From: Haplodiscus bocki
Taxonomy: Eukaryota
Direction of reading: 5' to 3'
Assembly: GCA_965655095.1 (NCBI GenBank)
Contig: OZ296655.1
Span: 55,800,001-55,864,000 of the forward strand
Length of the DNA stretch: 64,000 nt
How positions within the stretch are numbered: the stretch's first letter is position 1; each line of letters opens with the position of its first letter. Positions 2,661 through 40,563 of this stretch are shown piece by piece. The notes beneath the pieces are model-generated. The model made no database searches and had not been told where the DNA came from. It worked only from the letters and a program-made list of their open reading frames with translations. Made by a program: the position numbers and the translations under genes.

Positions 2661-4330
2661 ACAGGTGCCAAAAAATGAATTACTGGAATGTCGCAGAGAG
2701 CCACTAATATTTTACTTTTTCCTATTTTTCTCTCTTTTTTTTCTTTTTCATCATTTATCCTTTTAACCACAATCGGGTAATAACAAATAATCAGAAACAA
2801 AAAGAACTGAAAAAAACTACACTTATAAATACAACATCAGCATCGAAAGAATTTCAATCTTCTTAAATACCGGCACCACCAAGATTCCTTAAGTTCTCTA
2901 TCAAGGAAGCAACAGATTCTGGCAATCAAACCCTGACGACATCGGTTATCGGGGCTAACCAGGTAAAGGACTTTGAACGCACATAGTAGCTGAGGAAGAA
3001 GTATCTAAACTTCCCCCATCCACAACTGCATCTGCACGAATCCCTTTATAGCACTTTTACGACTCTTTCAAAGTTTAGTCTTTATCCAAAAAATCCACAT
3101 ACGACCACAGATTGTAACCTGGCTCAACAGCGATCCCACCAAAAATATCGCATTCTGAAATAACAGATGGTAGAGAACTCTGAACTCGCCTAATTGCTTC
3201 CGATAAATCCGGCCCTTCTCCAGACCCACTTGCAGACCCAAATCTGACTTCCAGTAACTCCTATACAAGGTGCAGTAAACATAAACAGCTCAGGCGGAAC
3301 TTTAGCAAAACCTTCAGCTTATGACATAACTGAGGACAACCAGCTAAAAATGAAATAATGTCTCCAACTTCAGGCCCGAAGTTATCCTCATGCATGTAAG
3401 TTTAACGTACATCGTCAATGAAAAGCATGAACTCATCAACATGACTGTTCGAAGTTCTTCAGCAACCCACTCACGGACACAAAAATTGTGAACCAAAACA
3501 CCCTAGCTCTTCAGGGAGGCAGAAAACAATAGAGTAATTGAAGCAGCCCATGCCGTTTGAAAGATGTAACTTCCACGTACTATGGGCCAAGCGCCCATTG
3601 CGCACAAACTTCATAAGTTTGCGAGCCGACTCCAAAAATGGACTCAATGCCTCTTCCACAACAGCAGATGTCACAGCATGGTCACTAGCCTTCTTCTTTT
3701 ACGTCTTCTTCGCCATTTCGACAGTAACCTTTGCAACACGCAGAGCACAAAAGCTGAAATTGGGTCTTCCTCATAAAATCACCCAAACCAAACAATGTTA
3801 TGCCGGTGGAATCTACTTCGTGGATGGCTTCCCAATCTCCTTCCGATGGTAGATAAGCTTTCGTAAAAATCCTTGAAAGTAAACCATAAAAGAAGGAAGC
3901 CAACTCTCTGTTGAGTGAAAAACCTTCATTCTGTCTGTTGCGTCAACGCAAATTGGAACACTGCTGGAAGTCCTGCATGATGGCAGGGAACAACTTGAAT
4001 ATCGAAGGAGAATAGATATCGGCAGTCATATTTGAATTAATCACTTGAGTTTGAAATGAAAATTAAGCCAAAAAAACAAACAGTTGACACAAATTTTCCA
4101 ACATTGTTTTTCAAGCAACACTAACATGTCCTTTCACAATACTGAACTCCCTCTAACTGTCCACTTGCCTCAATAAAAATACAAACGTCAGCCACTTGAT
4201 GATATAGTTCTTGAACCACCAGATACAGTCTCAAGAAATCAGATCCTCAAGAGCCTACAAAAAAATTGAACCCACATATTATTTTGTCATTTTCACTACT
4301 GTTGCCAACATCATGACCTACTTCGCGCAA

Positions 4331-6340
4331 TTATTGAATAGGCTGCATCCACTTGATGTTCAGAGTATCAAGAAAGCGGGGCAGAAGGGACTTTAGAAGC
4401 GAAAACATATCGATACGCCCCATCACACTGTAGCTAGGCTTCCGCAACATTTTCTCCAAAATCAAACTCTTGAAGTCAAAAGGGTAACGCACACATACAT
4501 TACTGCTACGGGACAAAGCCAGAGCTTTTATCACGTCGACACCAACTCCTCCACAATTAACAATCTCGAGACTTTTGACACAAGTCCAAGAATTTGGGAG
4601 ATCCCTAACAATTGGTTTTTTACAACCGGGGCATCGCGATCACAAAGTAACACGTCAAGGTCCAACAATCTTCCTCCTTCCCAAAACTGAACACTCACTC
4701 TAGGGCACTCGACGCTAAATACAACTGACACGAACATTGACTACACCAGAACAGATTTCACATGCCACATCAGTCGGATCAAACAAAAATGAAGATTTCC
4801 CTGACCTAACAAAGCCAACTTCGTACTTCTATGTAAACAATACGAAAACACATAATGACTACAAACCTAATTATCCCAACTCGATGGCATAACCACGTCA
4901 ATATAAAAAACTGTGACTAGTGCAATCCAACTAACACTGACATTCTTGGCTCCAGTTAAAATTTGAAGTCGGACCAGAGTTTCCAGTTAAACTGCCCAGG
5001 TAATTCCACAAACCATCTAAGATCCACCGTTGCCCTCCACTCTTAAGAAATGTTGTCAACAACTGCAGCTAGAATCACACACAATCCTCCCTACCAGCAA
5101 ACATAAACGGTTTCCCTTCTACAACATCATAGTAAGAAGGCCTCTTATGATCCGTTTCGGGCACTTCACAGATCTTGTACGCTTCCCGTTCAGCAGCTAG
5201 ACACTCCCCATACAACAGACGGGCATCCATCCTTCTCACAGCCTCAAGGAAGTAGCGATCGCAGTAAGGCTGCTCTAGTCGCAAATGCCCTGCACTCTGA
5301 TAATGTCGTTTCATTTCAATTATCCCACGTGAAAGCATCAAAAAGATGACTCTGCAGATCATGCAGTAAATTTTGGTGATTTTTTAACGGATCTTCAGGT
5401 TCAGAATGAAAAAGTCTAGCCCATGGCAATCACTGTAACACCTCCTCAAAAAAACATCCATCCACCTTCATCTCGGTTACCGGGAGGAATTGCGTTTGGG
5501 CGACCTTCAAATGACTTGAATGGATCTACCTTCTTGGATTTTTTTTTCGTCTTCAACTTCCGCGTTAACACAGCCAAGTGCAAATCTTCTTCTTTTGACG
5601 CCATAATGACAGTTCCCATTGATTGCGTTCCTTGCGTCAAAAAAGCAATCGTTCACTGCTCAGTTCCACCCGGCCAAGCAGTATCCACACTCGCAGCTGT
5701 CGCCGTCAAACCAAACACAGTAGGTAGCAAATACTTTGGTTCGGACGCAAAACTGTCAGATCGCGTGGAAATATTTACGTTTGGTCCAATCTCTCCACGT
5801 CAACCCAAGCTGCCAACTCCACGAGCACAAAACAATAGGTCTTCCAAAAGCCCATAAGACGCCAGTGTGACTTCCAACCCCACTTTTCTAGCATTTTGAG
5901 TCATCTGATCAGCACTCAAACTAGTAGTGGTATCGCCTCGATCCAACACGGTCGGTGGGTTTAGCTGGAAAAAATTCTCTAACAAAGTTTTCGCAGACTC
6001 ACTAGGGTAAAACTTTGACTTTTGTGAAAATCTGTTTTTGTGCAATTAACTCTTCTCGCGGCGTCAATTCAATATTCACGTTCCTCCAAGAAAACCTAGA
6101 TGGTCCGGCTTGCTCCGCTGTGGTACCCCTCCCAATCATCGCATCAATCTCAGACAAGGCAATGTCAGTACTTCCTACTTCCACCGACGCCACGGTCATA
6201 CAACTGCTCCCCAGATAATGTCTATTGAAGTTTGCAGGTCGACCGGTGGCTACAGGGTCTACTTCGGATTTTTCCACAGCAAACACAACGTTTGAAGCAC
6301 GTTTAACGGGAGTTCCCACAGGTGACACTTTCAACGACAT
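4331..6340 (-). pseudogene. Fragmented antisense ORF of unknown function inside retrotransposon A
   Basis: Chain of abutting or overlapping minus-strand ORFs (6002-6340, 5800-6045, 5446-5640, 5075-5362, 4531-4737, 4331-4534) with protein-like composition, starting at ATG 6340. No family recognised. Confidence 0.5.
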
Positions 6341-8571
6341 GACTCATGTCTTCCACCTTCTTCCAACATTTTCACGGTTGTCGAACTACTCAAAACACGA
6401 CTGACTCTTGACTCACCAACAACTCATTCCGCCGTGGCACCTCCAGTAGCAATCTGCACTTGTAATTCTCGTTCGCCCAAAAATTCAGCAACTGAAACTC
6501 TACCCAAGTCCAAGAGTTTACTCATTTCAACTCCACTGAATGACTATCACTTCTCAGCACATTATGAGCTCACTCTCACCCTATCATCAATTTCGGTGTC
6601 CCCTTCCCCACCCACGTCAACGGCACCACTCGTAACGTTTGGTCTTTCAATCTGTACTGTAGAAGGAACTCCTTGCAAAACGGTCATTGGTTTAATAGGG
6701 ACGTGTCACTTTCTAGGATTTCAACAAAATCGGGAACACATACCGGGGGAAAACATTAGCTCCTGCTGATTCTTTCCAGTTTGTTCTTCCTCATACAATT
6801 GGGTTCCTTTTTCTAATTTACGGAAACTTATGAACGTGCGCGGTAAATTACGAGAAAATTCGGGCATTTTCATGGTCGTCCAAGACAGGAAACACGCGTT
6901 TGATCATATGCATTTAAATCGCGTGCCTTGAAAAGTGAAGAAAAATTGTTGCGGCAAAATGAACAACAATTCACTGATCAAATAGTTCTTCACTTCCTAT
7001 CCCAATATGCGAACTAAAGAAAAAAAATCAAACTCACCCATTTTGAACAAAATGCTGATGTTCATAACTCCCACCGTACCACACATTCTTCGGGTAGAAC
7101 ACTGACTCCAACTCAGAGATTATGTACAATAGCAGATATATTATAGTCCAAAGGCCCACAATTTCATACAATAGAGAAATAAAAGTTATTCAAATGAAAA
7201 AGGTACAGTAAGTACAACCTAAAAATGTGTGGATGTTGTGGTTGTACAATATGGATTTACGTCCAGACTATTTCATATTAATGATCTTTGACCTACATAT
7301 AAAAGTACATACTTATTTGCATCGAGTAATGTCAACTCCTGCTTGAACTGACTGACAAATTCCCAACCAAACAATTTCACCTATGTCCATTTTACGTCAC
7401 ATTCAAATTTCATTGACCCATAAATTTCATTTTACTCATAATTCACGCTTTATCAAACTTAAATCCTAATCAAAAGTTATCTGAATCAACTGATTGGATA
7501 AACCTCTTTCACCTATCACTACCATTAGAATCCGACAAAACTGCTTCGTTTTACATAAATAACTCATCAACAAATCTCAATAACAAGCTGAACAGGTATT
7601 TAACATCACACGTCTACGCTCTCACTGCTTCTGGCATTCATCACTTCACCAATATTTACCTCTGTTTCGTTTTGTTCACCCTTCAAATAAAAAATGCTTC
7701 GCAATGATTGGAAAGACTTTTGGTGGGTCCTCCCAGTCCTTCTCCTTCTCCCGAACCAAATGCATTTCATTCAATTCAGATATCACTCCCACATGAATTT
7801 TGATACAATATCCAACTTTTTCAGGGAAGACGAAAACCTTTACAGGAACGGCTCTCCGGTATTTTGAAAAAAAAAAAACATGACAGAAAACCAATGGACG
7901 AAGATGGAACCATGCAGACAGAGCCCATATTTTTGTCAATCGAAGAAGGCACAGCGTCAGATTACTCTATGTCTCACCAATATTTGGCACAAGATGTTGA
8001 CACCTAATATGAGACGTTGAACTAATTTATGGTTTCCCCAAACGAACCGTCAGACACACACAACACAGGTCACAATTTTAAAAATATGACACAGATCAGA
8101 CCAAACCGTCTCTATCCTGAACATCAAATTCGACATCACAGCCAACCCAGATATTACACAACGTCTCTGAGGCAACAACAAGTTACTACACTCAATTTGT
8201 GCCCCACGCTATTGAAATACGCCAAATATCAGAAACGCTTGATTCAACCGAGTCGCAAACGCCGTCAAACCAAGGGCAAACTAAGGTATTCCCACAATAT
8301 GATTTGCCAGATACTCCCCCTTCGACCAACACTCATTCATTGCCAAACATCAATTCAGTATTACAAGTGCTTGCACTACACACCCACACAGGAATTAAAA
8401 ACAGATTAACAAGATGCAACGTATGTGGGTGGGAAGTAATTGAAGAAACGGTGGCAGTCAAGTTACGTGTCACTAATGAGCCTGAGGAAACAATCAAAGA
8501 CCACCACAATAAACTACATGCAGTCTCAGGAGGTCTGCAATGAGGAGCGTTCATTTTTGTCCCCCGGGGAG

Positions 8572-10443
8572 TGTCACAGGCTATGGCCTGTGACAGAGTA
8601 ATACAGCAAATGAACAACTGAGACACTTGCCAGGAACCACAAGGAAACTTTTTACCACTATTCCAAGACTAAAAAATAAAATATATAGTTCTATATTTAT
8701 TCATTCATTTATTTTGCACTTATGTAGACTCTTATGTACCCATAGCAAAGTATTTTTAAATTACGACGCTATGAAAATTACATTCTTTTTTCTGTCAGAT
8801 GTAAATCCATACTACAATCCATAATACGAAGTACACTTGAGCACAGAGAAAGGAGCAAATTCAGAGCAGCAATATGCAATATTTTATCGATTTGTTCTTT
8901 GTTTTGTGAAATTCTTATTGACTAACCTTACTCTGACCAACCGTTGACAAAGAACAAGCTCCTTTAATTTATCATGTCATAAACAGTGCTATAGAAGTGA
9001 TTTTGACGAAGCTGACGGCAGCCAAGCCTTCAATTCCACCACCTCACTGCCACTCCGAACTTGCGTCAAAATCACATCACCAACTGGGAGAGTGACATGA
9101 GGAAAAAACATTAACACGTCGCCAGTACAGAGCTACGCAAAAGTGATCATATACTTCTACCAATGATGATTTGACAAATTTAAAATAAAACAATTGTCAA
9201 ACCCATGTAAAAACATTCTCCTTTATTTATACCAGAAATATATTGAAAAGTTTTCGAAGACTAGTGTCAAATCTACGTCAAGTCGTGTATTTATGACACA
9301 GTAACAAATTCCTTTCATACAGTCCAAAGTAGTGCTACCTCATAAACGTGTCATACTTAATGAGTATTGATACTTTTTCCTATTCGTGATTTTTTCCGTG
9401 CTTGTGAAAGTACAGAAAGTTCAGTTATTCATTTATACCACCAGCATTAGAAGCAAAAGTAGTCGTAATTAGAATGTCTTGTAGAAGTTTTATTGGACTC
9501 TTTGAGGATTCATATTCAGAAATTCAATGTTATTTTTGGAACTACGTAAACATGATGTCATGTTAAGGCGGTAGTTTCTTCTTTGATCTAATAAATTTAG
9601 TTATAGAATCACATATAGCGTCTTCCTCTGAGAAAACCTAATAGGCACACGAGAAGAACAGATGACCCTTGCTTTTACCGCAGCACGAAGCCAACGAGCG
9701 AAGTTCAGAAAATGCAAAATCACCCAACTGATCTGTTGCAAAACTCAATTTGAACGTTTTACCAAGCAGTCAGCTTTATATACCCAAAACTCATATAAAT
9801 TTGATAATTTGTTACTTTCTTTTGTTCTGTTGCACTCTGTTGATTTATATTTTGAGTTCCATTCAATTTTTCACTCAAAATTATTTCTGCCCGAAAGAAG
9901 AAGCACCGAAACCAAAGACAACTTAGTCAGTTGAAGGAAACTTGAAACGATTTTGTCATCGGTAATAACACCAAAGTGAGTGCGCTTGCAAATGAGATCT
10001 TAGAACCTCAGATCAACGGTTTTTCCACTAATTTTGGGAGTATTACGGCCGGTGGAAACAGTCCATGTCAAGATCAAATCATTGAAAATTATAGTGACGA
10101 CAAAATCAGAAAAGCGGTTGATAATGCTGTCACGACTGTTGAAAATCGGGTGCATGACGCAATTTTGACAGCGATGGACAACGTACTATATCGCGAGTTG
10201 AAATGGCTGTGAAATCAATCACCGGTTCATCAGGACGGAGACCCTGTAGTATGGTTCAAAACCCTGATCAAAGAAATTTCACAGGGAAAACTGAAAACAC
10301 TTAGCTCTTGTCGGCCGCAAGCCGAATAGATTTAAACGTTGCACAAGACAGAAATGATGAGACTCGTAATGTTGCAAATTTCAAGGATGGCGACTTTCCG
10401 GCATTGAGACCTAATAACGACTGGAATGCGCACGCTCATCACA
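8572..10443 (+). repeat. Putative 3' LTR of element A
   Basis: Begins TGTCACAGG right after a short purine tract and opens with a perfect 10-bp hairpin (8572-8595). Inferred to end ...CATCACA at the CA-rich microsatellite. The partner LTR is not in the window. Confidence 0.45.
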
Positions 10444-20318: not shown

Positions 20319-20497
20319 TTAAAACATGCATCTGCAATAAGTAGTAATGGCGTCTCTGTGAGCTTCCACGTTGTGCACTCTCAGAATGTCAACTCCGAGA
20401 CTCGCAGCCGCTAAATGAACGCCCAAAGTTCCACCCACTCTTTCTCTAACATTTTTTCTTCCTGTCAAATCTCCCACCATTCTTTTGTTGCTGGCGC
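20319..20497 (-). CDS. folP: DHPS exon 5 (GASNKRMVGDLTG...GVDILRVHNVEAHRDAITTYCRCMF*), not in the ORF track
   Basis: S-x-K and RVH motifs; TAG| acceptor; TAA stop at 20321-20319. Confidence 0.92.
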
Positions 20498-23400
20498 CTA
20501 CAATAATTGGATGTTAACAAGTGAATTTTAAGAAAAATAATATCTCTTTCGTTGTGCAAAAATTTCCATCAATGTTGTTCCAAATCAAGTTCGCCAACTT
20601 CCTTCTTTGTTACTTTCAGTCATTCAGGGGGCAAGACACGTGAGATCAGTATTTTTTTTCCAATTTTCACAATTTTTCGCAATCAATTTGAGAAAAAAAA
20701 ACTCGCAAAAGTGAAACCGTAATCCAAACCCAAAATATTAACCACATTTTGACATAACTTTTCAAAAACTACTTTGGGTCTCAATTTTCAAGCTTTAAAA
20801 AATCCTCTTGTACCAAAAATTGAATTTGATCAATAATGCTTCCTTAAATTGCCAACAAACACTACCTATGAGCACACAGAGGCCCATTTTCTTCAACAAA
20901 GGAATGGATTTGATTAACTGCAAATCATGTTCCAAAGTCTTCCCGAATCCTATCCCGGGGTCAATGCATAAATTAGCAGGACTTCCTCCCAACTCATAGT
21001 ACCTCCTGGTCAGTGATTAAATCGGTTTATAATTAAAAAAAAATTCGAAACATTTACAAATGATTTCGCTGACCCCATGAGCCAAAGAAAGCATGTTGGC
21101 GGTAAAATCATTTTGATGCAACGACAATAAACTGATACCAAAACTTCCTTTGCAACGAAAAAATATGTCCCTAATTGATAGATACGATCAAATAAAACAG
21201 TGCAAGAGTTATTTCAAGTTGTTGACTTTTCGACAATATTTATTCCTCTGTTCCAAAAATTTGAACAACTTTTGATAAAAATGACATCCAAAACCATTAT
21301 CATATTTGTTGTTTTACGTTCAAAAACTTAGTGAACAAATAACATAATTGCAGCAAAAATCCAATTAGTTTTTGCTTTCTCATCTACAATTCACCCGCCG
21401 CAGTTTGATAAGACTGTGTTCACAGTTGTTGCCAAAGGTGAGCCATTTTTAGAGTTCGAAAAATTTTATGCCTACCGATTTTTTTGGTTACCTTGTAGAT
21501 AGCCCAGTAACAACCATCATTTGAACAAGTCATTCGATTTACACTGCAATAACGCCAAAAAAAGCATGAATTGATAAAACACAGCTGGTTAAGATCTACG
21601 AGTGCACTCTTCAAGTCATTACAGCAATAATCCAAAAATGATTGTAAATAATGCATCCGCGATCAACGGCAGTGCATTACTGGCTCGATGCAAGTAAAGG
21701 CAGTTTTTAACTTATATATAATATTTTTCCAGTAAAACGCCGTTAAGGCCGCTATTCTTCCGGGGAATAACCACTTCTCTGGTTAATTTTGACCGCCGTT
21801 ATCGACCTTATACCACAGAAGTTTCGGCCGATATTTCGACCTTATACCACAGAAGTTTCGGCCGATATTTCGACCTGGGAAACAGTCAATATAAAAATAA
21901 GGGAGCTCTAGATGCCATCAAACAACGTGGCATCAACTTGGCGTGCACAGTGCGTGATCATACAAAACCAAGCATTATTTAGGATTTACAGGAAACATTT
22001 CAAATCTAGGTTTAACTTTCTTAGAGAAAAATCAATTCTAACTCCCCCGACAGTAGCAGCGAGAATTACAACGCACTATGTATGCGTGGACTCTTCTATG
22101 ATTGGTTGAAAATCACTCACGTGTACCATAAACTTTGACGTTGCTTATTTATTAACGTATGCAATTTCGCTAGGGGTTCGAATCAGTTAGAAGAGGGGAG
22201 CTAACAGAAAAGATCCGCACTTTAGTTTTCAAATCATGGCTGGGAACTGTGTTACTTAGTTATTTGCAACTGTCAATAAGTTAGCAAATGTTGAAAGATA
22301 TTTTTTATCGGCTTTTTTTCGTCTGAAATTCCTGGTAGGATTAACAGATTTTTCTGGTGCAGCACATGTTGCTTTTAATATTCTCTCGGTTAACACCAGA
22401 AGTCACAAAAACATTTCAGTTCGTGCTTTTGTGATTAGGAATACGAAGTTTAACGAAAAAAATTATGCCCGTATTTAAGTAAAAAAACTCGATACTTATA
22501 CTTAAATTCACTGCCAGTTGGTTTCAAATTCACCTTTTTCGAAACCTGCAAGAAAAGATGGCGCATAAACGGGGTGAATGTATTGGAATTTGATCAACTC
22601 AGTCTTTTTATAGTGTATGGAAATTGCCATTCTCCCCATTAGATTTAGAAAACCTTGAGATGCAAGCATCTGTGCAGTCAATTATTGAGCACATCACAGA
22701 TGAGAAAACCAACCACTTTTCAGATCTCAAAAACTGAAAAATCCAGAAAGAGTCAATAGTACAAAAAGAGGTAATTTTGAGTCGAAAACGAGAGTTAGAA
22801 ATGCGGTCAAAGCTCTTTTGAAATTCAATTGCGTCCCCATATTGATATACCACAGGGAAATGACTGTGGAAGTGAACGTTGACAATGCAATTTATAGAAA
22901 TCTTGAAGGACTTGACTATAATGGATCTCGCATTTACGACAACTACCAAGGTTCAACACACTCCTTTGTGGCATCTCGAACCTACAACAAAGATGGCAGT
23001 GCGATATACTCAAACCTAGCTGTGTTTATGCATCACGTGTCATGTGCTTTTGCAATAATCTTTCATGTTAACTTTTGTAGTAGGATGAGATAATTTCCAA
23101 GTTATTTGACAGCAATGATTTGTTCCAAAGTTTGTCTGAATTTTGGTAAGGTTTGATTTATTTTTCAAGTCATTCCAAAGAATCGAGTAAAATCTTCATA
23201 TAGTGGTGAGCGAAAAAAATGTCGCTTTTACAAAAAGGGTTATTGTGAATCTTTGAACCGACGAATGTTCTTGATATTCACACAATATATAGACATGGAA
23301 CTTCTCTTTCAAAACATGTAACATTTATTCTCTCGTGTGTAGCTGCTGAGAAGCAGAACACGTAAAGTTTGTTCACGATTTCGTGAAAACATGCAGAAGC

Positions 23401-25976
23401 AGCGAGTTATTCTTGAATTATGCTTCAATGAGTTAACTCATGATCGGAACACCTTACGAAACTTATCAAGTATGGCCCCAAGAACATTTCAGCGAAACAT
23501 GAAAAAGCTCGAAAACGGAGAAAGACTGGGACGGAAGGTTTGGAGAAAAAAAGAATTTTCAATGCGACATTTTTTTCGCTCACCACTATAGAACAACATG
23601 AGGAATCCTATATAAAATGGAGATAGTGAACCGTGTCTCGGCTTTTCAAAACTATCAGAATTATTCTGATGTGATTCCGAAAGACCGAAGCCAGCAAGTG
23701 GAAATAGGGAGCCAATAAACAGTGAGCAAACAAGATTCAGTGATAGAGTTTCCGTTATGGCGTCATGATGATCATGCCGAATGAAGAAAGCTGGCGCATG
23801 CTCATCAAGTCGTCCGCTATATTCACGCACCTGCTTTTTCATTCAGCGTGATATTAGTGACTTCGAAGCCAAAAAAACGGACGGTCTTTAAAATGTGTTG
23901 GACAGATTGAAAATTTAATACACCGATCTGGCAGAAGGTTTGCTAGTTACGAAAATGCGTGGAAAAGTTGCAAATCATAGTGAGTGCCCAAAAAACACCC
24001 GCAGAACAAGCTTTGAGCTAAAAAAAACTTTCGGAACGATTGAATCACTGTTCCTAGCTTTGTTCTCAAGGTAAGTGTAAACTTCGTTCACTACATCTTC
24101 ATACTTCGGATCGTTTTGCATAGTCAAGCTTGGGGCCAATCGATGCATGAGCACTAAAGGAATATTATAAGTGGCCGAAAACTCGATAGTAGCTCCATTT
24201 GAATCTTCGCCGGCTGATACGTCGTTTATGATGTTGGCACCGGAGAGAACAGCTTGTTTTGCCACTGATAATTTGGTTGTATCAATACTGATGGTAACTG
24301 TTTGGCCTTTCATCGGCGTTGTACGGTTGGGTTTACACAAACGCTTATTTGGTTTATTTAAGAAAAAGTTACTTTTCACTGAAAAACAGTTCCAATTTAA
24401 CTGACAGAAAAAAGTTAGGATTTTTTGTGTTTTTCAACTTCAATGATTTTTATTCAAAAATAGGTTGACTCCTAAAATAGTTCAAAATTATGAGACCCGA
24501 TTTTAAACATTGCACGAGACGAAAAAGTTATGGTCTCTTTATTTTATGCGACTATCATAATTCATCCATTCATGCTACTTTTTCAAATCTTGGAACATTA
24601 TTGAGTTTAGAAAATTTTTGCCCCATTCACAAAACCAAATCAATGCTAGAGGCTCTCCCTAACAGAGATTTATAAATTAATTGTGAATCCATGAAAATTT
24701 TCGAAGATCCTTCCATGTACAACACCACCTTTCGTATCTCTTCGAATTCCTTCAATCACAGGAATAACTCGGTCCAATTCCACAGTTTCTGATACAGGCA
24801 CACTTCCTATACATACCGATCAGTTTTTTAATCGCTCAAAATTCAAAGTATTAAAAGTTGAAATTCCTTGTAACGATCACGACTTGTTAATTACTGCGCA
24901 GAAGAAAGTACATTCCACTCATAGATTTAACAGACGCCGTATTTTTTGACAACTCCGTGATTTTTTAGGTTCACGATGGAAATTTCGAAGTAAGTCAGAA
25001 CTCCTTCGCAGTTTCAATCTTTTAATCCAGTAGATGAAACATATTCGGCAGTAAAAACAATTTGATTCATTTGGTCTAAAAATTACAAGGGTTGTCAGTG
25101 CAGCGATATTTGATCTAAATAAAGTAAAAAAAAACACAACGCAATTTTACCACACGACAGGCCGTACTTTCCTAAAAAGCAGCAAAATTCTATACGGTTA
25201 GTCAGCGCGTGGAAACAAGCCCGCCTATAGCGGTGACATTTCGTTTTTTTTTCAACCCGTGCGAACTGCCATTTTCCTACAACCTTTTAGCATGTCAAAT
25301 TTTGTTGGAAATCAGAATATCTTGAACGACAAAAGCGTGCCCGAAGTAATTCTAACGTGCGACAAAATTTTTTTCTATCTCCTCGACCTAAAACTGCACT
25401 GAGAAATCAAAACAGTTAAAAAAATTTCGAGACGCGCGGGCCCGGCTGACTTAGGCTGTTCCCGGCTTGTAGTCTTTTGAAAAGTAGAGCACCTGAGAGC
25501 TAGGTGAACTTTGAAATGCTCGTCAAAAATATTGATACTCGCATCAAAAAAAGCCGTCAATCAGAGGCATTGGCTCAACCTTGGCGAGGAAAGAAGTGCA
25601 ACTTTCATTCTCATATTTGACAAATCCAATACAATTCTTCCCGCAAAAAGCAGTCCTCTGTACTGGTTTTTTCAATCAAACTGAAAAAAAATCAGACATA
25701 AATCGAGCAATCCTTCAAGTAATTCAGAAAATACCCTTTTTCCATCTTCCGGAGATGTATGAGCGATTAAGCTGGTGTTCCTGGTCTAGAAGACTCTCCA
25801 CCAATATCTAAGATGTCAGCTCCAGCGGAAACGGCCTCCAATGCCTGTTTGAATGATCTCTCAGTATTGTGATTGGGGTCTCCGTCGTAGAAAGAGTCAG
25901 GGGTGCAGTTGACTACGGCCATCAAAAGAGGACACCCCCCTCGTTTCAATTTCGAACGCACGAACGAAGCAAACAT
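20319..25976 (-). CDS. folP: Dihydropteroate synthase, stand-alone, 5 exons: complement(join(20319..20497,20866..21005,24054..24297,24729..24806,25781..25976)), 837 nt, 278 aa
   Basis: The spliced product has the DHPS motifs in order with no stops: MAVVNCTPDSFYDG, GADILDIGGESSRPG, VSETVELDRVIPVIEGI, ISIDT, GANIINDVSAG, VLMH, YEDVVNEV, IDPGIGFGKT, VLIGASNKR, ILRVHNV. Exon phases are consistent (1,1,2,1). The start ATG is the first in-frame Met; an extra upstream exon cannot be excluded. Confidence 0.93.
20498..20865 (-). other. DHPS intron 4, 368 nt, GT-AG, weaker terminal arms
   Basis: GTAGTGTT-TGTTGGCAA ... TTGTTAACA-TCCAATTATTGTAG. 9 bp with two G-U pairs (20849-20857 and 20512-20520). Confidence 0.88.
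20866..21005 (-). CDS. folP: DHPS exon 4 (RYYELGGSPANLCIDPGIGFGKT...CVLI)
   Basis: DPGIGFGK motif; bounded by CAG| and TAG|GT. Confidence 0.93.
21802..21876. repeat. Tandem duplication, 34-bp period (2.2 copies), in DHPS intron 3
   Basis: tcgaccttataccacagaagtttcggccgatatt twice, then tcgacct. Confidence 0.95.
23199..23800 (+). mobile_element. Tc1/mariner-like DNA transposon remnant in DHPS intron 3
   Basis: TA|TAGTGGTG start resembles a TA|CAGTG TIR. ORF 23391-23591 resembles the N-terminal paired-like HTH (..RTFQRNMKKLENGERLGRK). No intact DDE domain. Confidence 0.4.
24054..24297 (-). CDS. folP: DHPS exon 3 (VTISIDTTK...INDVSAG...VLMH...YEDVVNEVYTYLENKAR)
   Basis: Pterin-binding Asp, Asn and Met motifs; bounded by CAG| and TAG|GA. 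Confidence 0.93.
24298..24728 (-). other. DHPS intron 2, 431 nt, GT-AG, terminal complementary arms
   Basis: GT-GGTGTTGTAC ... GTACAACGCC-GATGAAAGGCCAAACAG. 10 bp with one G-U pair (24717-24726 and 24315-24324). Confidence 0.88.
24729..24806 (-). CDS. folP: DHPS exon 2 (GSVPVSETVELDRVIPVIEGIRRDTK), not in the ORF track
   Basis: Matches the DHPS 'VSxEEELxRVIPV' helix; bounded by TAG| and AAG|GT. Confidence 0.92.
24807..25780 (-). other. DHPS intron 1, 974 nt, non-canonical GA-AG, terminal complementary arms
   Basis: GAACACCAGC-TTAATCGCTCA ... TGAGCGATTAA-AAAACTGATCGGTATGTATAG. The 11-bp arms are a perfect match (25760-25770 and 24828-24838). Confidence 0.82.
25781..25976 (-). CDS. folP: DHPS exon 1 (MFASFVRS...NCTPDSFYDG...DIGGESSRP)
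   Basis: Loop-1 and loop-2 DHPS motifs; ends CCAG|GAACAC. Confidence 0.92.
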
Positions 25977-29559: not shown

Positions 29560-31720
29560 TAGACTCACTTACAAGGAAACTTTTTAGTCTACTTTTGAAT
29601 ACCTGAAGACTTACACTTATATCTCGCAAACTCAAAGGCAGTGAGTTCCACTTCAAGAAAATGTGGTGAAAGAAAGATTTGGAGCAAGATGAAACAGATG
29701 GTACCTTCCCTCAAAGAATTATTTGATTGGAACGGTTATTCACCTGAAAATTTGCGATGGGTAACTTTATTGTCCACAAATGCTTCTTTTTCTATTGTTG
29801 ACATACAGGTAAAAACAGGTCAATGACTTCAGATCATTACGTTGCCGAATGCCGAGTACACTTTTGTGTATTCTCAAATCAAATGAACAAGTAAACCCTT
29901 GATGATGGAACGAAAATAAACAGACTTTAAAGCCCAATTCACCTGTTTCTCTAACGATAGTAATAACGTTAGGGTAATTTGCAGCAGCAATCAAGCAGAA
30001 TACTGGGAAGCACTCAAAAAGAGCCTGGAAAAGCATGAGGAGAACTGTTCTTAGAAACTTATGTTCTATACTTTCGATGGTTTTGATACCCACAGCCATT
30101 TTCTTCAATACCTTTTTGTTTTCAGTCTGGAAATCGAGGTGCTTATCAATTCTTACATGTATAAACTTACACTGATTCGATTTTTCAATTCTAGATGAGC
30201 CTACTACAATTGTGCCTGAGTTCTGCAGACGTTTATCTTACGAGAAAAAGTGATGAATTATGTTTCACTATCGTTCAAGATCAACCGCTTAAAAAAGAAG
30301 TAATTTTCTAATTTTACTACATTTTCCTGTCAGCGGTTAAGTGAAATCTCCGATTCACTATCGCTGCAATAGAGCAAGCAATCATCAGCAGACTGTATTA
30401 TATGAGCATTTTCTCTAATTTGATCCGAGAGGTCATTTACATATAAGTTGAACAGCAGGGATCCCAGCACAGTTCCTTCAGGAACACTTTCTTTCAGTTT
30501 AATCCAATCGGAGACTATTTTATTTACTGTAACTTTCTGTAATCTCTTCGTTAAGAAACTCTCAATGCATTCAATAGCCGAATGAGAAAAACTCAGTGAT
30601 TTCAATTTTTTCAGAAAGATTCCATGCGATAATGAGTCAAAAGCTTCAGATAAATCCAAAAATACTGCATGAACCACATTGCCATTTTCTATTGAATCAG
30701 ACCAATTATCAGCAGATGCGTTTTGACAGTACTTTTTAAAGGCGAGTTGGCGTTTAGCGAGCAAATTTTTGCAGTCATGACCGAACCAGGATTCTTTCAA
30801 AAGTTTCGGAATTTTCTTCGTTAGGAATACCTTTTCGAGGGGAGCATGCTTTTCCGCAGCACTAGACAACAAATTGACAAACATGTCAAACTTATCACTG
30901 GGAGTTGAACACTGATATACTTTAAACCATGGGAGACCTGACAATGTTTTGCAAAAAGCGATTTTGTCAAATTTTTTCAGGTCAAAACAGTGAATTATGA
31001 TGCGACTTAGTTTTCCAACAGTAATATCTGTAAAAAGAGCACAACCTAAGTGACCGGTTTTGAAAGGACTATCAAAAACAAAGCTTTTCTCGTCCGGTAT
31101 ACGTTCCGTTAGAATATAAACAAAGTGTGTTTTCGTAGTTTCACAAATGTGTGTTAGAAAAATTGGACCAGCTACTGAAAAACCGTAGGGCAAATTCGCA
31201 GTTTCTAGATTTTCCCGTTCCAGCGTTGTAAAGAAATCCAAATTGTAGTCACCCATCGTGGTGATCGGAAGCGGTTCGCAAGTAGCGTTATCAAAATTAC
31301 GCGACAATTGTTCGAGGGAGTCAATTTGGTTAGCTTTCAGAAGATTATAGGTTACATCCAGAAGCATTTTTGACTCACAAATATTAGAAAAGTTACAGCG
31401 GCATTCAACCCATGAAGATTCGAATTTAGATTTATCAAAAATATTCAAATCTTCACGTTCTTTCGGTGCTAGTCTTAAAGGCACAAAGAGCATTACACCG
31501 CAACCCTTCTTTATTTCATTGTTTTGATTTCTAACACATATAAATAGTTCATTGTGGAAAAAGCGACGTTCCATTAAGATAAATCATCATCAGGCGTGAG
31601 CCAGATTCCAGAGATACCAACTATAGCATTTTCGCCCACGTCGCTAACAAAAGATTTCAACGGCATCCGTTTGTTTGTTACACCTTGAAGTTCATGTGAA
31701 TGAAGGGCAGTGTCTATTTG
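29560..31720 (-). pseudogene. LINE ORF2 (APE endonuclease + reverse transcriptase), with internal deletion and stops
   Basis: GISGIWL, KKGCGVML and MGDYNLD (APE); VFLDLSEAFD, VPEGTVLGSLLFNLYVNDL and SADD (from YADD). The sequence jumps from the linker straight to RT domain 3. Confidence 0.9.
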
Positions 31721-31861
31721 TAATTCACAGACAACTGGGAAAAACTTTCAAGACTAATTTCAGGACAAGGATTTTGTACAATGCCACCGCACTTTTTCAC
31801 GAATAACGAAGCACAGAGGAAAAAACAAAGTGTTTAAAATCTTGTCAGATATTCCAAGGTT

Positions 31862-32574
31862 TCAAAACGAATACTTTTTCAAACTATTGCAGGCATTAGC
31901 GAGTAGCTCATTATCACACTTTTGTAGCTTATAAAGATTATCAAATACCAGCTTTTGGTTATCTAGCATGAATATAAAAATTTTCCCATTTGCAGTTACA
32001 ACACTGCGAACATCATCTTTACTTCTCAGGTCAAGGCTCATTTTTGCACGTAAAGGCGTCAAGTCATCATTTACATAGATACTGGTTTCTTTCAGATTCC
32101 TCCTGTGCTTCATAAATTGGTGCTTAGTATCCCACCTGACAAACTTAGCAATTAGAGGTTTTTGGCCCTTACCTCCGCCAGGTAGGCGGTGACAGGCACT
32201 AACATCACGAGCAAAGATTGTGACGCCAGCTTTTTCAGCCACACTAACCACCTTGGCGAAGACGTCTTCATCCGGCTCCTCCTCTACACCAAAGATGCGC
32301 ACGTTCTCCCTTCGCCCGCACTGCTCAATGCTGTCGGCCTCTATGATTAGGGACCGGTCATCCACAGTAGAAGCTCTCATCTGCAGCTCCTCAACAGCGC
32401 AAATGCCGCAAAGGAAAAGTTTTTGGGAATGAGCGTAGACACCCAAACGTTTGTCCAGATGATGCAGCCATTCCTGTCCATTCCAGGTCCAGTGCACTCC
32501 ACGAGATGGTTGCTGCCGTCGTCCTTCTTTGCTGGGTTTGGCGCAGATGCTGAGTTGTTGCGCGTCGGCGCCAT
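31862..32574 (-). pseudogene. LINE ORF1p (coiled coil + RRM-like + C-terminal domain), frameshifted near the N-terminus
   Basis: EQCGRRENVRIFGVEE, ACHRL, PLIAKFV and IYVNDDLT motifs typical of the L1-type ORF1 of CR1/L2/Jockey-group LINEs. Confidence 0.85.
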
Positions 32575-33799
32575 CAGTTATTCTATAGTAAATCTTTTTA
32601 ATAAGTTTATCACGACAATCTCAATTTATGAAATTTTTGAAATTGAAATATTCCACGAAATGCATGAATAAATCTTGCCCCTTCCTGATTTTAAGGCATG
32701 CCTGGAACTTCAAAACTTCCTTGCAGATTAAATTGAATTCACCTAGTCTGGAGCGTCATGAGAAATAATAAAAGAATAAATGAAGAAATTTTAGGAAAAA
32801 ATTGGGACAAAATCGGATTGCAACATCAAGCTAATAAAACAAAAAGAAAGGCTATTAGGCAAGAGAGGAATGAAGAGAGCCCGCTGAAAGCGCCGGTGCA
32901 ACAACATCTCTGGCCGCTCTTGCATGGAAGTTTTACATGTTTTTGTAAGTTGCCTGATATGACTTTTTACAAGTTTTAACATGAAGCATGGAAAATTTTA
33001 TATTGCATGAAATTGTGACTGCTGGCGGGACTTGTTACTAAACTTTTCCATACAATATACAAAATCTGAATGCAGCAGACATATTTCAATTTATACAAAA
33101 TTTTCCATTCAGTATTAAAGATTTTCCACGCACATTTCCAAATAATACGCGCCGTTCAAAATTTGTCATCGCGGTAATTTACTCATTTCGCTGTTTTTTT
33201 ATTAAGACCCCTGAAAGATTTCATGAGCAACAGAGGTTTATCATTAAGTAAAAATAGGACGTTTCAGCAATCTGTGAGCAATTTTCGATCGAAAAACAAA
33301 AATTTCAGAAAAAAACTGAATCAAAATGTTGGAGGCTTAAAACTGGTTTTATCTAATTGAGTCCGGACACCATAATTAAACTTTCATCCAGGTCAAGTCG
33401 ATAGTTTGTTCTCACTGACTTTCTTTCTGGAGAGGTGACAAATACTTTGCTGAGGTGAAGTAGAGTATTTAAAAAATGGGAAAGTATTTTTCGATACGTT
33501 TTGTGAGCTTTTTGCATTGCAATTTCGTGAAATTTTTGCAAGTTTTAAAAAATTTTGCATGATTTTTCCATGGAAGATCCCTAAATTGTCGATGTTTTAC
33601 AAGAAATATCCCTGCATGCATTATTACAACAAGCAAAATTTTCATGCGAGTCCGACTTGGGATACCATTCTATTATGCAAAAAATTTTTTACACCAGCTG
33701 TCCATCAGTTTGTTAGAAAAAGCTAAATTAAGATATGTACCTGTCACAGGGTCTCACACTCGAAAAGGAGATATGTCAGTCATATTTTTTCAAAAGACT

Positions 33800-37650: not shown

Positions 37651-39282
37651 CTAACTCTCCAAGTCGATCTGGAATTCTACCACTAGTAAATTTTTGTAAT
37701 CGAACAGAAACAAACTTTTTTCACTGTTCCATTTAATATTATCAACCGCAATGAGACCATGGTGCGTGTAGTTGATGTTAAGGCGTAAGTTCTTGCCCGG
37801 GCAAAATACAGTGACATTTTTAAATGAATCAATAACAGCATAATGATTGATGGAACATCTAAAAAGCACTGGTTTTTCATCCAATAACAATGTATCACTC
37901 GGCGTAGACTTGGGGTAGAACTCAATTAGTTTACGATCAACGTTCCAACTTGCACAAGAAAATGATTCATCGTCCCAAAAAATTAGGTCCAAAGGGACGG
38001 TGCTTTTGTCTTGAAGGAACTCATATTCGATAATCTGCGTCTCCAGATTATAAATAAAAACATTGTTGCTTTTGTTGCACATTGCCAACCAGTTACTCCA
38101 AATAAAAACCGATTCCACCTCACAATCGCGGAGGTCAAATGTTTCTAAACTCCACCTTAGCGGGTGGGCTGGATCACCAATTTTCACATCGAGAACACAA
38201 AAATTGACCACTCCATCAGACTTAACAACTCCAAAAACATCATTACTTGAATCAAAATTTCTCGAAATTTCACTTGTCGCCGTCACCTTCATGTCATTAC
38301 CATTCAATATCTGATGACTTCTTTCAGTAACTTTTGTCCACATTTTGACAACTTTCGGAGTCATCTTGATTAATTCAGGTACTTCGATTGAACTTACAGC
38401 GTTTTCAATTGCAGCTTCAAACAGCACGTCTAAATCTTTGGTCCATTTTAAACACACGTGTTGTTCCAGTTGCTTTCGCTGATCTGTGATAGAATTCCTC
38501 AGAAGTTTTTCAATTTCTAGATACTTGGAAGTTAAATTTCCTTCACAAAGAGTCAAAACATCTTTCAAATTAAAGAAACTACATTCTGCACGTGCAGTTA
38601 CTTCTTTCAACACTTCTCTATCTTTTTCCGAGACCGCGCCACTTTCGCTTTCTGTTGACAAAAACTTTTCCTGGTTCAAGCCATACCATTTTTTGGGCTT
38701 TGAAGCGATCACTCGGTCAAGCGTATCTCGGATTACTTTTACGAATTCGGTTTGATCTGACGGCACAGTTTGACAGATTGCATCGAAAGATCATTCCACA
38801 ATGTCTTCGAGATGCTTGATAGGTTTAGAAAGCTCCTCAAAATCAGAGATAAAAGCAAAGACTGTTTTCCGAACCTCACATGCTTTTGCAGAAACAGATT
38901 TGAAGTCATGTTTTGTATGACACTCTGTACACTGAGAACAAAACAGCACTTTCCAGTCTTCACAAAAATATTGGAGAAGATTTACATGCTTGTCACATAC
39001 TGCAGGCGAAAAACCCCTATGATCTATGACATCATGCTTTTGTCTTAGATGAAGAGCGACGATACAAATGCTGCAGAAGAATTTTTCTGCACTGGAAAGT
39101 TCACCACAACTGTTATAGCAAGTTCTGCAACGAAATGCTATGTTTAGATCCAAACATTGCGAACAGCTGTGACACAAACATTCCTTTCCATCTTCAATTT
39201 CAGGATCCATCTTCAAAACTGGATCCATTAGTTTGTTTTGTTTAGCTGCGACAGGGCATTCAATTTTTTCTATTACCGACAT
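37651..39282 (-). pseudogene. Intronless double B-box / coiled-coil / beta-propeller-like (RING-less TRIM-like) gene, 543 codons with one in-frame TGA at 38791-38793
   Basis: CHSC..FRCRTC..FFCSICIVALH..H (B-box-1-like) and VCDKH..YFCED..LFCSQCTECH (B-box 2), then a helical region and a beta-rich C-terminus. ORFs 38791-39282 and 37651-38766 are in the same frame. Confidence 0.75.
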
Positions 39283-40563
39283 TGCTCCACTGAAATAAAA
39301 CCAATCGCTCGCGTGAAAAAAAATATTTCATCAATCAACGGCCACTTTCAGAGAATCAAAAGAAACTGAAATCTAAAACAAAGGTTGCGTAATAACATCA
39401 GGAGCTCGACGCTCAAGTCACAGATGATTTTTTTCAGACAGAGAAGAGCGATGGAAAATCAATTGAAACGAAAAACTCACCCCAAAAATCCAAGATAGCC
39501 AAAAATCAGATCTGATGCATCCTCTCGAAACTGAATTTAAATAGAACTTAAGAAAATCAGTGCAACAGATGCATTTTAGGTGCTTTATATGCAGAACCAC
39601 TCTCGCTCTATACTCAAACTCGTACAAGCTGGACCATAAAAAATCTGTGGCCCACATGTTCTAACTGCTTTCAAACTGTTATTATGTAAAAGTGGTCCGT
39701 TTTTTACGGATCTCCTTATTCTCAATTCCATATGCCCATCATCATGCCCTTTAGGTAGCGTCTCTTTACATCCTAATTTTCATGAAATTCGCACAATAAA
39801 GAAAGCAATAATTGATAAATACCTTCCGAATGCTCAAAAATTTCGTCTCCGAGCGTTTAATCGCAACGATAGACATTCTGATGACGTCGGGAACTCTTAA
39901 CACCGGACAGTAAAAAATAAAGAGCCGGCACTGTGCAATTCTAATACACGAACTGAAACTTTATGAAGCACATTTCAATGAAGGGCAAATCCACTAATCT
40001 GTCCATACGACCTCGTTTCAATTTTATTCTTATATCGGAGAACTAAATTTTCTTCAGAGTAAAACTATCATCAAACAATACATCGAGAAAAATTCAATGC
40101 AATCATTTTGTCATTTATAACAGTACAACATTTTTCTCATAAAAATGAACACTCGCCGTAAGATGAAACTCTTCTTTGCTTCCTCCCGAGCTGCAAAAAT
40201 TTTGATAATCCATCCATCAAAGCTTTCCACTTACACATGACCAAAACTTTCCACATTTTTCACACAATCAGCTTATTTTGTAGTCGATTTCGCACTTTTC
40301 GATCGTCAGTATGGTAAAAAAATCATAGTTTGAAATGTGATCAAAATGGCCTTTTCTCAGTGAAAATAGCAATGCAGTTGAAGTTCATCCATTTGTCTTC
40401 AGACTTTTACTCATTATTCATCTTGCTGCCACATACTTTTGCGAAAATTTTTTTTGCAACCCGTAGGATAGCAAAGAAGCCACTAAAGCACTAATTACAG
40501 CAATCAAATTCGTCGAATTATTAAACAATCTAGCAACTTACACTAAATTTGGTTCATGTTTCA

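What the first reader, a model, noticed from the sequence alone, without database searches (positions are those of the whole stretch)
20498..25780. All four DHPS introns have complementary ends: candidate structure-guided splicing system
Seen in sequence: each intron carries a pair of arms near its two ends. Intron 1: TTAATCGCTCA/TGAGCGATTAA (11/11). Intron 2: GGTGTTGTAC/GTACAACGCC (10 bp, 1 G-U). Intron 3: CAGTGATTCAATCG/CGATTTAATCACTG (13/14, across 3 kb). Intron 4: TGTTGGCAA/TTGTTAACA (9 bp, 2 G-U). The 5' arms start at +3 to +11 and the 3' arms end 5-21 nt before the acceptor. The arm sequences differ between introns (1 and 3 share only a short AATCG core), so this is not one repeat. The usual signals are weak: donors read GAACAC, GTGGTG, GAACAG and GTAGTG against consensus GTAAGT, and no acceptor has a polypyrimidine tract. 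Every upstream exon ends in AG. Established: end-pairing is described for euglenid non-conventional introns, and TIR-bearing non-canonical introns for the larvacean Fritillaria. Inference: an RNA stem brings the splice sites together and replaces U1/U2AF sequence recognition. Three of the four non-Watson-Crick positions being G-U suggests selection at the RNA level.
Basis: partly seen in the sequence, partly recalled or inferred. Interest (0 to 1): 0.93.

Follow-up and report, generated by a model that had tools for sequence, protein, structure and literature searches.

The report
Four gained introns with pairing ends
A folate-synthesis gene of bacterial origin sitting in a eukaryotic (apparently animal) genome has acquired four introns, each with ends that pair with each other, most likely leftover transposon end-repeats rather than a proven new way of splicing.

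Summary
A minus-strand dihydropteroate synthase gene is split by four introns, and the 281-aa spliced product lines up with uninterrupted bacterial homologues (~50-55% identity). All quoted arms, offsets, donors (GA, GT, GA, GT), AG exon ends and the lack of pyrimidine tracts are correct.

- **More than chance:** cognate end duplexes average -16.8 kcal/mol against -8.9 for non-cognate pairs. The arms pair with each other in the full-intron minimum-energy fold in 4 of 4 introns. In three the fold holds 14-15 end-to-end pairs, which about 7% of random pieces reach.
- **Real introns:** dN/dS against a 3%-divergent second copy is 0.16.
- **The splicing claim is untested:** no RNA run was found. 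Introns 1 and 2 fold as well antisense, the G-U argument is not significant, and 3% divergence gives no power for covariation.
- **Shared ends:** introns 1 and 3 match at 13 of 20 positions in register at their 5' ends.

Best reading: transposon-derived (introner-like) introns gained after gene transfer, spliced as G[T/A]...AG with copepod-type AG|GAA donors. The end stems are inherited inverted repeats that may help splicing. This is a new member of a known kind. First readers of this scan noted similar introns elsewhere in this genome.

The parts
25781..25976 (-). DHPS exon 1 (ATG to ...CCAG)
   Evidence: Pterin_bind profile positions 1-49, E 1.9e-12. Spliced CDS of 846 nt with an intact frame.
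24807..25780 (-). Intron 1, 974 nt, GA...AG register. An AGGAA direct repeat lies at both junctions.
   Evidence: All arm pairs form in the minimum-energy fold, pair probability 0.94. Single-copy depth.
25760..25770 (-). Intron 1, 5' arm TTAATCGCTCA (+11 to +21)
24828..24838 (-). Intron 1, 3' arm TGAGCGATTAA, ending 21 nt before the acceptor. It is followed by ACTGATC, a branch-site-like motif whose A lies at -14.
   Evidence: The branch-site reading is my inference from the sequence.
24729..24806 (-). DHPS exon 2
   Evidence: Collinear with bacterial DHPS.
24307..24728 (-). Intron 2, 422 nt, GT...AG. A GAAAGG direct repeat lies at both junctions.
   Evidence: Arm pair probability 0.99.
24717..24726 (-). 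Intron 2, 5' arm GGTGTTGTAC (+3 to +12)
24315..24324 (-). Intron 2, 3' arm GTACAACGCC, ending 8 nt before the acceptor
24054..24306 (-). DHPS exon 3
   Evidence: Pterin_bind profile positions 71-156, E 9.8e-18.
21006..24053 (-). Intron 3, 3048 nt, GA...AG. An AGGA direct repeat lies at both junctions. It carries nested high-copy repeats.
   Evidence: 13 of 14 arm pairs form in the minimum-energy fold of the whole 3 kb.
24037..24050 (-). Intron 3, 5' arm CAGTGATTCAATCG (+4 to +17)
21011..21024 (-). Intron 3, 3' arm CGATTTAATCACTG, ending 5 nt before the acceptor
20866..21005 (-). DHPS exon 4
   Evidence: Pterin_bind profile positions 159-203.
20498..20865 (-). Intron 4, 368 nt, GT...AG. A TAGG direct repeat lies at both junctions.
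   Evidence: 15 end-to-end pairs in sense and 0 in antisense.
20849..20857 (-). Intron 4, 5' arm TGTTGGCAA (+9 to +17), part of a longer imperfect inverted repeat
20512..20520 (-). Intron 4, 3' arm TTGTTAACA. The second copy of the locus reads TTGCTAACA, which turns one G-U into G-C.
20319..20497 (-). DHPS exon 5 with the stop codon
   Evidence: Pterin_bind profile positions 199-244..
23199..23590 (.). High-copy MITE nested in intron 3. The element itself spans 23201-23588, with an exact 25-nt TIR TAGTGGTGAGCG... that extends imperfectly to about 33 nt, and is flanked by a TA target-site duplication. It is absent from the second copy of the locus.
   Evidence: Depth about 1500-7000 against about 30.

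Best explanation
These are four spliceosomal introns gained after a bacterial folP-type gene entered this eukaryotic genome.

- **Origin (inferred).** Each intron most likely began as the insertion of a non-autonomous DNA transposon (MITE or introner-like). The paired arms are what remains of its terminal inverted repeats. The AG|G-containing direct repeats at the junctions are compatible with target-site duplications.
- **Splicing (inferred).** The introns are removed as G[T/A]...AG by a spliceosome that tolerates AG|GAA donors, as described for the copepod Eurytemora affinis.
- **Role of the stem (inferred).** The stem comes with the origin. By looping out 0.4-3 kb, it places the 5' splice site within a few tens of nucleotides of the branch and 3' splice site. 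It therefore plausibly helps introns that lack a pyrimidine tract. Neither a requirement for it nor a replacement of U1/U2AF is shown.
- **Shown here.** The gene structure, the bacterial affinity, the arms and their statistics, purifying selection on the coding sequence, and the shared termini of introns 1 and 3.
For: - **The gene is bacterial in type and intact.** Five exon ORFs hit Pterin_bind in order. The spliced 281-aa product is collinear with full-length bacterial proteins. The nearest relatives among 1.84 billion representatives are at most 55% identical. The three whose contigs were fetched lie in ordinary bacterial gene neighbourhoods without interruptions. All four introns are therefore gains.
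- **The interruptions must be removed.** dN/dS against the second copy L001 is 0.16, from 11 synonymous and 6 non-synonymous changes.
- **The introns are genomic.** All eight junctions are bridged by DNA contigs from two samples at single-copy depth. The same structure stands in an independent assembly.
- **The end pairing is non-random and cognate-specific**.
- **The palindromy is at the DNA level.** Introns 1 and 2 fold equally well antisense.
- **Introns 1 and 3 share termini.** All four of their ends fit one ungapped template, G-R-W-CA...T.AATCG. The 5' ends match 13/20 in register (p 0.0024) and the 3' ends 13/17 (p 0.014). Their ends also cross-pair at -17.5 kcal/mol.
- **TIR elements are active here.** A TA-flanked MITE inside intron 3 is present in the window and absent in L001.
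- **The GA donors match a published pattern.** They fit the E. affinis pattern of obligate exon AG and A at +3, with gaacac and gaacaa examples in that paper's File S1.
- **The architecture is described.** Inverted repeats of 8-20 nt plus direct repeats of 3-5 nt over the boundaries are reported for Amoebophrya introners.
Against: - No intron has another copy in the 64-kb window. Introns 1, 2 and 4 and the ends of intron 3 show single-copy depth at 85% likeness or more. No transposon family is therefore demonstrated.
- The direct repeats are not flush with the inverted repeats; spacers are 1-7 nt on the 5' side and 3-19 nt on the 3' side.
- Beyond the AGG that splice-site consensus already explains, the direct repeats are not clearly longer than chance. 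This is my own estimate, p about 0.08.
- The intron 4 pairing is specific to the sense strand: 15 pairs against 0.
- No RNA data confirm the junctions.
- The second copy L001 carries a 1-nt deletion in exon 1.
Confidence: 0.58

Rival explanations
1. Structure-guided splicing. The stems are maintained by selection at the RNA level and are needed for splice-site pairing. They substitute for U1 and/or U2AF recognition at weak sites, in the way shown for the (AC)m-(GT)n introns of teleosts.
For: - Pairing occurs in 4 of 4 introns with high predicted probability.
- There is no pyrimidine tract and two donors are GA.
- The intron 4 stem exists only in the sense strand.
- The one arm difference between the two copies turns a G-U into a G-C.
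- A precedent exists for bridging structure replacing U2AF2 (PMC4691745).
Against: - Introns 1 and 2 fold as well antisense.
- There is no compensatory change and no power to see one at 3% divergence.
- The 5' arms of introns 2 and 3 start at +3 and +4 and would cover the 5' splice site.
- Arm distances to the splice sites vary from 5 to 21 nt.
- G[T/A]...AG ends and AG|G contexts are ordinary spliceosomal signals.
- Terminal inverted repeats are expected anyway if the introns came from transposons.
Confidence: 0.2
2. The interruptions are not introns. They are transposon insertions in a dead or dying transferred gene, or segments removed at the DNA level, so the pairing ends are plain transposon ends with no link to splicing.
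For: - Removing a transposon plus one target duplication restores any reading frame, so collinearity alone does not prove splicing.
- No RNA run was found.
- L001 has a frameshift in exon 1.
Against: - dN/dS is 0.16 and the 281-codon frame is fully open in the window.
- All four interruptions start with G and end with AG, in AG|G contexts.
- Among the joints that one search listed, none skips a whole intron; 228 further joints were not shown.
Confidence: 0.07
3. Euglenid-type nonconventional introns, excised by a non-spliceosomal route that reads the stem (code N3-CDG ... CH'G-N5-6|R).
For: Intron 3 fits the published Euglena code exactly: GAA-CAG ... CTG-ACCAG|G (PMC11282704). The introns lack a pyrimidine tract and have direct repeats at the junctions.
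Against: Introns 1, 2 and 4 do not fit the code in any register that their direct repeats allow. All four have G...AG ends. The gypsy, B-box and envelope-like genes around the locus point to an animal-like genome.
Confidence: 0.03
4. Chance complementarity in AT-rich, repeat-rich DNA.
For: Individual p values are modest, 0.007-0.067. About 7% of random pieces reach 14 end pairs.
Against: All four introns reach that level, so the joint probability is of the order 1e-5 to 1e-3. The cognate assignment is the best of 24 permutations.
Confidence: 0.03

Closest known systems
Amoebophrya introner elements (Farhat et al. 2021, PMC7789003)
   Same: Inverted repeats of 8-20 nt join the two ends of one intron. 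Direct repeats of 3-5 nt overlap the exon/intron boundaries. A predicted hairpin brings the exons together. Boundaries are partly non-canonical. [quoted passage not shown]
   Different: That organism is a parasitic dinoflagellate in which U1 snRNA was not detected, and most of its non-canonical introns follow AG-A(N) patterns. Here the ends are G[T/A]...AG and the surrounding genome looks animal.
GA/GG-donor introns of the copepod Eurytemora affinis (Robertson 2017, PMC5714493)
   Same: The exon ends in an obligate AG, the donor is GA with A at +3 (AG|GAA, including gaacac and gaacaa), and the introns are lineage-specific recent gains.
   Different: That paper reports no end complementarity and looks at no 3' ends. 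It is not known whether this window comes from a copepod.
MITE-derived non-canonical introns of Fritillaria borealis (Henriet et al. 2019, as summarised in PMC11282704; Soo et al. 2026, PMC13326754)
   Same: Recently gained introns with terminal inverted repeats and target-site duplications, removed by a U2-type spliceosome with relaxed specificity.
   Different: Fritillaria introns are mainly AG/AC and AG/AT with YAY triplets. Only intron 1 here can be read as AG...AT, with TAT at its 3' end.
Euglenid nonconventional introns (PMC12501133, PMC11282704)
   Same: A terminal stem close to both junctions, no pyrimidine tract and junction direct repeats. Intron 3 fits the CAG(+4-6)/CTG(-8 to -6) code.
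   Different: Three of the four introns do not fit the code. All four have G...AG ends.
Introners of Micromonas and others (Gozashti et al. 2022 and 2025, PMC9860276, PMC12130899)
   Same: Transposon insertion creates an intron. TIRs and TSDs are seen in many families, and splice sites come from the element or the duplication. Introners are reported in aquatic animals, including copepods, a tunicate and a sea urchin.
   Different: Introners are defined by many near-identical copies. These four introns are single-copy at the sensitivity available.
(AC)m-(GT)n bridging-structure introns of teleosts (Lin et al. 2016, PMC4691745)
   Same: Pairing between the two ends of an intron enforces splice-site pairing and removes the need for U2AF2.
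   Different: There the arms are simple dinucleotide repeats and their function was shown experimentally. Here the arms are unique sequences and their function is untested.

Membership tests
Introner / introner-like element | Many introns with near-identical sequence (a repeat family) | tested here: not met
   There is no second copy of any intron in the window. Depth is single-copy for introns 1, 2 and 4 and the ends of intron 3 at 85% likeness or more. Only the termini of introns 1 and 3 resemble each other. Whole-genome DNA could not be searched.
Introner / introner-like element | Terminal inverted repeats | tested here: met
   Arms of 9-14 nt in all four introns, above chance.
Introner / introner-like element | Target-site duplications flanking the element | tested here: inconclusive
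   Direct repeats AGGAA, GAAAGG, AGGA and TAGG lie at the junctions. They are not flush with the inverted repeats and are little longer than the AGG expected from splice consensus (my estimate, p about 0.08).
Introner / introner-like element | Lineage-specific, recently gained intron positions | tested here: met
   The gene is of bacterial type, and the three close bacterial homologues whose contigs were fetched are uninterrupted.
Amoebophrya-type introner element | Inverted repeat of 8-20 nt between the intron ends, plus a direct repeat of 3-5 nt over the boundaries | tested here: met
   Inverted repeats of 9-14 nt and direct repeats of 4-6 nt. Definition from PMC7789003.
Euglenid nonconventional intron | Signature N3-CDG ... 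CH'G-N5-6 followed by a purine in the exon | tested here: not met
   Intron 3 fits. Introns 1, 2 and 4 do not fit in any register their direct repeats allow (code).
Euglenid nonconventional intron | Excision as a full-length circle, independent of the spliceosome | not testable with these tools
   No RNA run holds the locus.
Fritillaria borealis non-canonical intron | AG/AC or AG/AT termini with YAY as the last three bases, and often YAY upstream of the 5' splice site | tested here: not met
   All four introns can be shifted to start with AG. Their ends would then read AT, AA, CC and GT. Only intron 1 ends in a YAY triplet (TAT) (rule).
Eurytemora-type GA-donor intron | Exon ends in AG, intron starts GA or GG with A at +3, acceptor AG | tested here: met
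   Introns 1 and 3 read AG|GAACA ... AG.
Structure-dependent (bridging) spliceosomal intron | Splicing depends on pairing between the intron ends | not testable with these tools
   Only predicted structure is available. There are no RNA or mutational data.

The most novel reading that the evidence does not exclude
In this apparently animal genome, newly gained introns with weak signals (GA donors, no pyrimidine tract) may depend on pairing between their transposon-derived ends for splice-site juxtaposition. That would be a metazoan, unique-sequence counterpart of euglenid nonconventional introns and of the teleost AC/GT bridging introns. It would also tie Eurytemora-type GA donors to transposon-made introns.
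Probability: 0.2. Interest if true: 0.8.

Novelty: new member of a known kind. Interest (0 to 1): 0.48.

Why it matters
A gene of bacterial origin is a clean natural experiment, because every intron in it must be a gain. Here all four gains carry pairing ends and junction repeats, and two use GA donors. This supports transposon insertion as the route of intron gain in an animal-like genome.

It also points to a testable link between the unexplained GA-donor introns of some aquatic animals and transposon-derived introns. If the stems proved necessary for splicing, it would extend structure-assisted splicing to unique-sequence stems in animals.

As it stands, the finding rests on one gene with no RNA evidence, and the architecture is already described in other lineages.

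Tried and rejected
- **RNA evidence.** Two run searches returned only four runs, each holding 67-92% of the locus's sampled words and covering introns and exons evenly when laid, so they are DNA. Junctions could not be confirmed, and no intron-less DNA form appeared among the joints shown.
- **Other copies of the introns.** BLAST against the window found none. A search for the intron 3 end-repeat found only its own two arms.
- **Covariation.** The only related eukaryotic locus (L001) is about 3% diverged and probably an allele of the same species, since its variants occur in run X3. The arms show 1 change in 88 nt against about 3 expected, which is not significant. A search of 1.84 billion representatives found no closer eukaryotic relative.
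- **More introns from this genome.** Pfam scans of 29 further ORFs found only retroelement domains, one B-box and three sub-threshold matches. No second multi-exon host gene was found.
- **Transposase remnants.** The scan of nine ORFs inside introns 1-3 found no transposase domain.
- **RNA genes.** Rfam and tRNA scans of the window were empty.
- **Readings rejected.** The euglenid code fits only intron 3. The Fritillaria YAY rule fits only intron 1. A Tc1-type TA duplication around intron 3 is absent: its flanks are AA and AC.
- **Organism.** It was not identified.
Full report
**The gene.** Five minus-strand ORF pieces between 20319 and 25976 hit the Pfam pterin-binding (dihydropteroate synthase) profile in order. 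Its 281-aa product is collinear with full-length bacterial proteins.

The nearest relatives in two very large protein collections are at most 55% identical. The three looked up lie uninterrupted in ordinary bacterial neighbourhoods, next to genes such as rpoC, smpB, flagellin and methanopterin-pathway genes.

The locus is flanked by retroelements. All eight exon-intron junctions are bridged by DNA contigs of two samples at the local single-copy depth. An independent assembly, L001, has the same structure.

The gene is therefore of bacterial descent, integrated in a eukaryotic genome, and all four introns are later gains. Against L001 the coding sequence shows 11 synonymous and 6 non-synonymous changes, dN/dS 0.16. 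The reading frame has been under purifying selection, which requires the interruptions to be removed.

**The observation.** In + strand coordinates and the G...AG register, the introns are:
- Intron 1: 24807-25780.
- Intron 2: 24307-24728.
- Intron 3: 21006-24053.
- Intron 4: 20498-20865.

The arms, their offsets, the donors (GAACAC, GTGGTG, GAACAG, GTAGTG), the AG exon ends and the lack of pyrimidine tracts are all as described. Each junction sits in a direct repeat: AGGAA, GAAAGG, AGGA and TAGG. The register is therefore ambiguous by 4-6 nt. No RNA run was available to settle it.

**Is it more than chance?**
- The duplex energy of the first 30 nt against the last 40 nt is -15.1 to -19.7 kcal/mol. 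Random pseudo-introns of the same lengths from this window give -9.4 +/- 3.6, so p is 0.007 to 0.067 per intron.
- Swapping ends between the four introns gives -8.9 on average. The cognate assignment is the best of 24 permutations.
- In folds of the complete introns, including the 3-kb one, the arms pair with each other in every case, with pair probabilities of 0.79-0.99 where computed.
- Introns 1, 2 and 4 have 14-15 end-to-end pairs. Of 900 random 400-nt pieces, 57% have none and 7% reach 14.

**What the arms are.** Several results point to inherited DNA-level inverted repeats rather than stems shaped on the RNA.
- Introns 1 and 2 fold at least as well on the antisense strand, with 17 end pairs each.
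- The four ends of introns 1 and 3 align without gaps to one template. Their 5' ends agree at 13 of 20 positions counted from the splice site (p about 0.002). Their 3' ends agree at 13 of 17 (p about 0.014).
- The 5' end of intron 3 pairs with the 3' end of intron 1 as well as with its own partner, at -17.5 kcal/mol.
- The intron 4 arm is part of a longer imperfect inverted repeat with an indel and transitions, which looks like a decayed repeat.
- Elements with end-repeats are active here. A high-copy MITE with TA duplication inside intron 3 is present in the window and precisely absent in L001.

Against a simple transposon story:
- None of the introns has another copy in the window or raised depth.
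- The direct repeats are not flush with the inverted repeats.
- Beyond the AGG that splice consensus explains, the direct repeats are not clearly longer than expected (my estimate).

**The splicing interpretation.**
The only G-U in a statistically solid arm is in intron 2, and the solid intron 3 mismatch is C-U. The intron 4 pairs were found by a search that allowed G-U.
- The second copy differs by about 3% in introns and 2.4% in exons, so identical arms in introns 1-3 mean little.
- The single arm difference turns a G-U into G-C in intron 4. That is compatible with pairing, but it is one event.
- All four introns keep G at the start, AG at the end and AG|G exon contexts.
- Both GA donors read AG|GAA, exactly the pattern of the recently gained GA-donor introns of Eurytemora affinis. 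That paper's own list contains gaacac and gaacaa donors.

I therefore read these as spliceosomal introns of a lineage with relaxed donor recognition. A helper role of the stem is plausible. It would bring the splice sites together across 0.4-3 kb where no pyrimidine tract is present, and there is an experimental precedent in teleost AC/GT introns. This role is not shown here.

**Comparison with what is known.**
- The architecture matches the description of Amoebophrya introner elements nearly word for word: an inverted repeat of 8-20 nt joining the ends, a short direct repeat over the boundaries, and a predicted hairpin that joins the exons.
- Similar transposon-derived introns are known from Fritillaria, Micromonas and other introner-bearing species, including aquatic animals.
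- Intron 3 fits the genetically defined Euglena code N3-CDG...CH'G-N5-6|R, but the other three do not.
- The Fritillaria YAY rule fits only intron 1.
- The defining feature of introners, many near-identical copies, was tested at the sensitivity available and not met.

I file this as a new member of a known kind: transposon-type gained introns with pairing ends. It is not a new splicing system.

**Limits.** The finding rests on one gene and four introns, with no RNA, no genome-wide test, no covariation power and an unidentified organism. First readers of this scan have noted similar candidates elsewhere in this genome: a family with AGTGATG...CATCACT ends, another GA-AG intron with terminal pairings, and a transposon-made intron in a sialyltransferase gene. 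These are unchecked leads, not support.

Noticed in passing
window 23199-23590 (inside intron 3); L001 about 8781-8783: A 388-nt MITE (23201-23588) with an exact 25-nt TIR (TAGTGGTGAGCG...) that extends imperfectly to about 33 nt, flanked by a TA duplication. It is present in the window and precisely absent in the second copy, whose empty site reads GTTGTTC-TA-TGAAG. Depth is about 50-200 times the single-copy level. This looks like a recently active Tc1/mariner-type element.
   Followed up: yes
window 21658-21851 and 23598-23985 (inside intron 3): Two further very high-copy segments, with word depth up to about 60,000 and 40,000 against about 30. The first contains a 34-nt tandem duplication. 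L001 has one unit fewer there and 300 extra bases at 21649.
   Followed up: partly
window 25883 (exon 1); L001 about 6500: The second copy of the locus has a 1-nt deletion in exon 1 (GACGGAGAC becomes GAC-GAGAC) that breaks the frame. It may be a null allele or an assembly error. Variants typical of L001 also occur in run X3, so L001 is probably a haplotype of the same species.
   Followed up: partly
window 24037-24050 and 21011-21024: Intron 3 fits the Euglena nonconventional-intron code exactly: CAG at +4 to +6, CTG at -8 to -6, a 5-nt spacer and a purine starting the exon. Its ends also resemble Tc1-type CAGTG termini.
   Followed up: partly
window 24820-24827 and 21006-21013: The 3' ends of introns 1 and 3 share the motif ACTGAYC, which matches the branch-site consensus. 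In intron 1 its A lies 14 nt before the acceptor. In intron 3 it lies only 5 nt before it.
   Followed up: no
window 37654-39327 (-): A B-box zinc-finger ORF (178 aa) and a 379-aa ORF lie in the same frame, separated by a single stop codon at 38791-38793. This may be a pseudogene, a readthrough, or a short intron containing the stop.
   Followed up: no
window 44563-45906 (-): Two ORFs in the same frame (292 and 155 aa) are split by one stop codon at 45028-45030. They have no Pfam hit, and their sequence looks like a viral or retroelement envelope protein.
   Followed up: no
window about 24470 (intron 2), run X4: A 1893-nt contig of the second sample matches only up to about 24470 and then continues with other sequence. 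This may be a polymorphic insertion or a divergent haplotype in intron 2.
   Followed up: no
window 1238-1906, 30333-32620, 50735-51190: Retroelement remains around the gene: an integrase core at 50735-51190, a weak integrase match at 1238-1906, and a reverse transcriptase at 30333-31583.
   Followed up: partly
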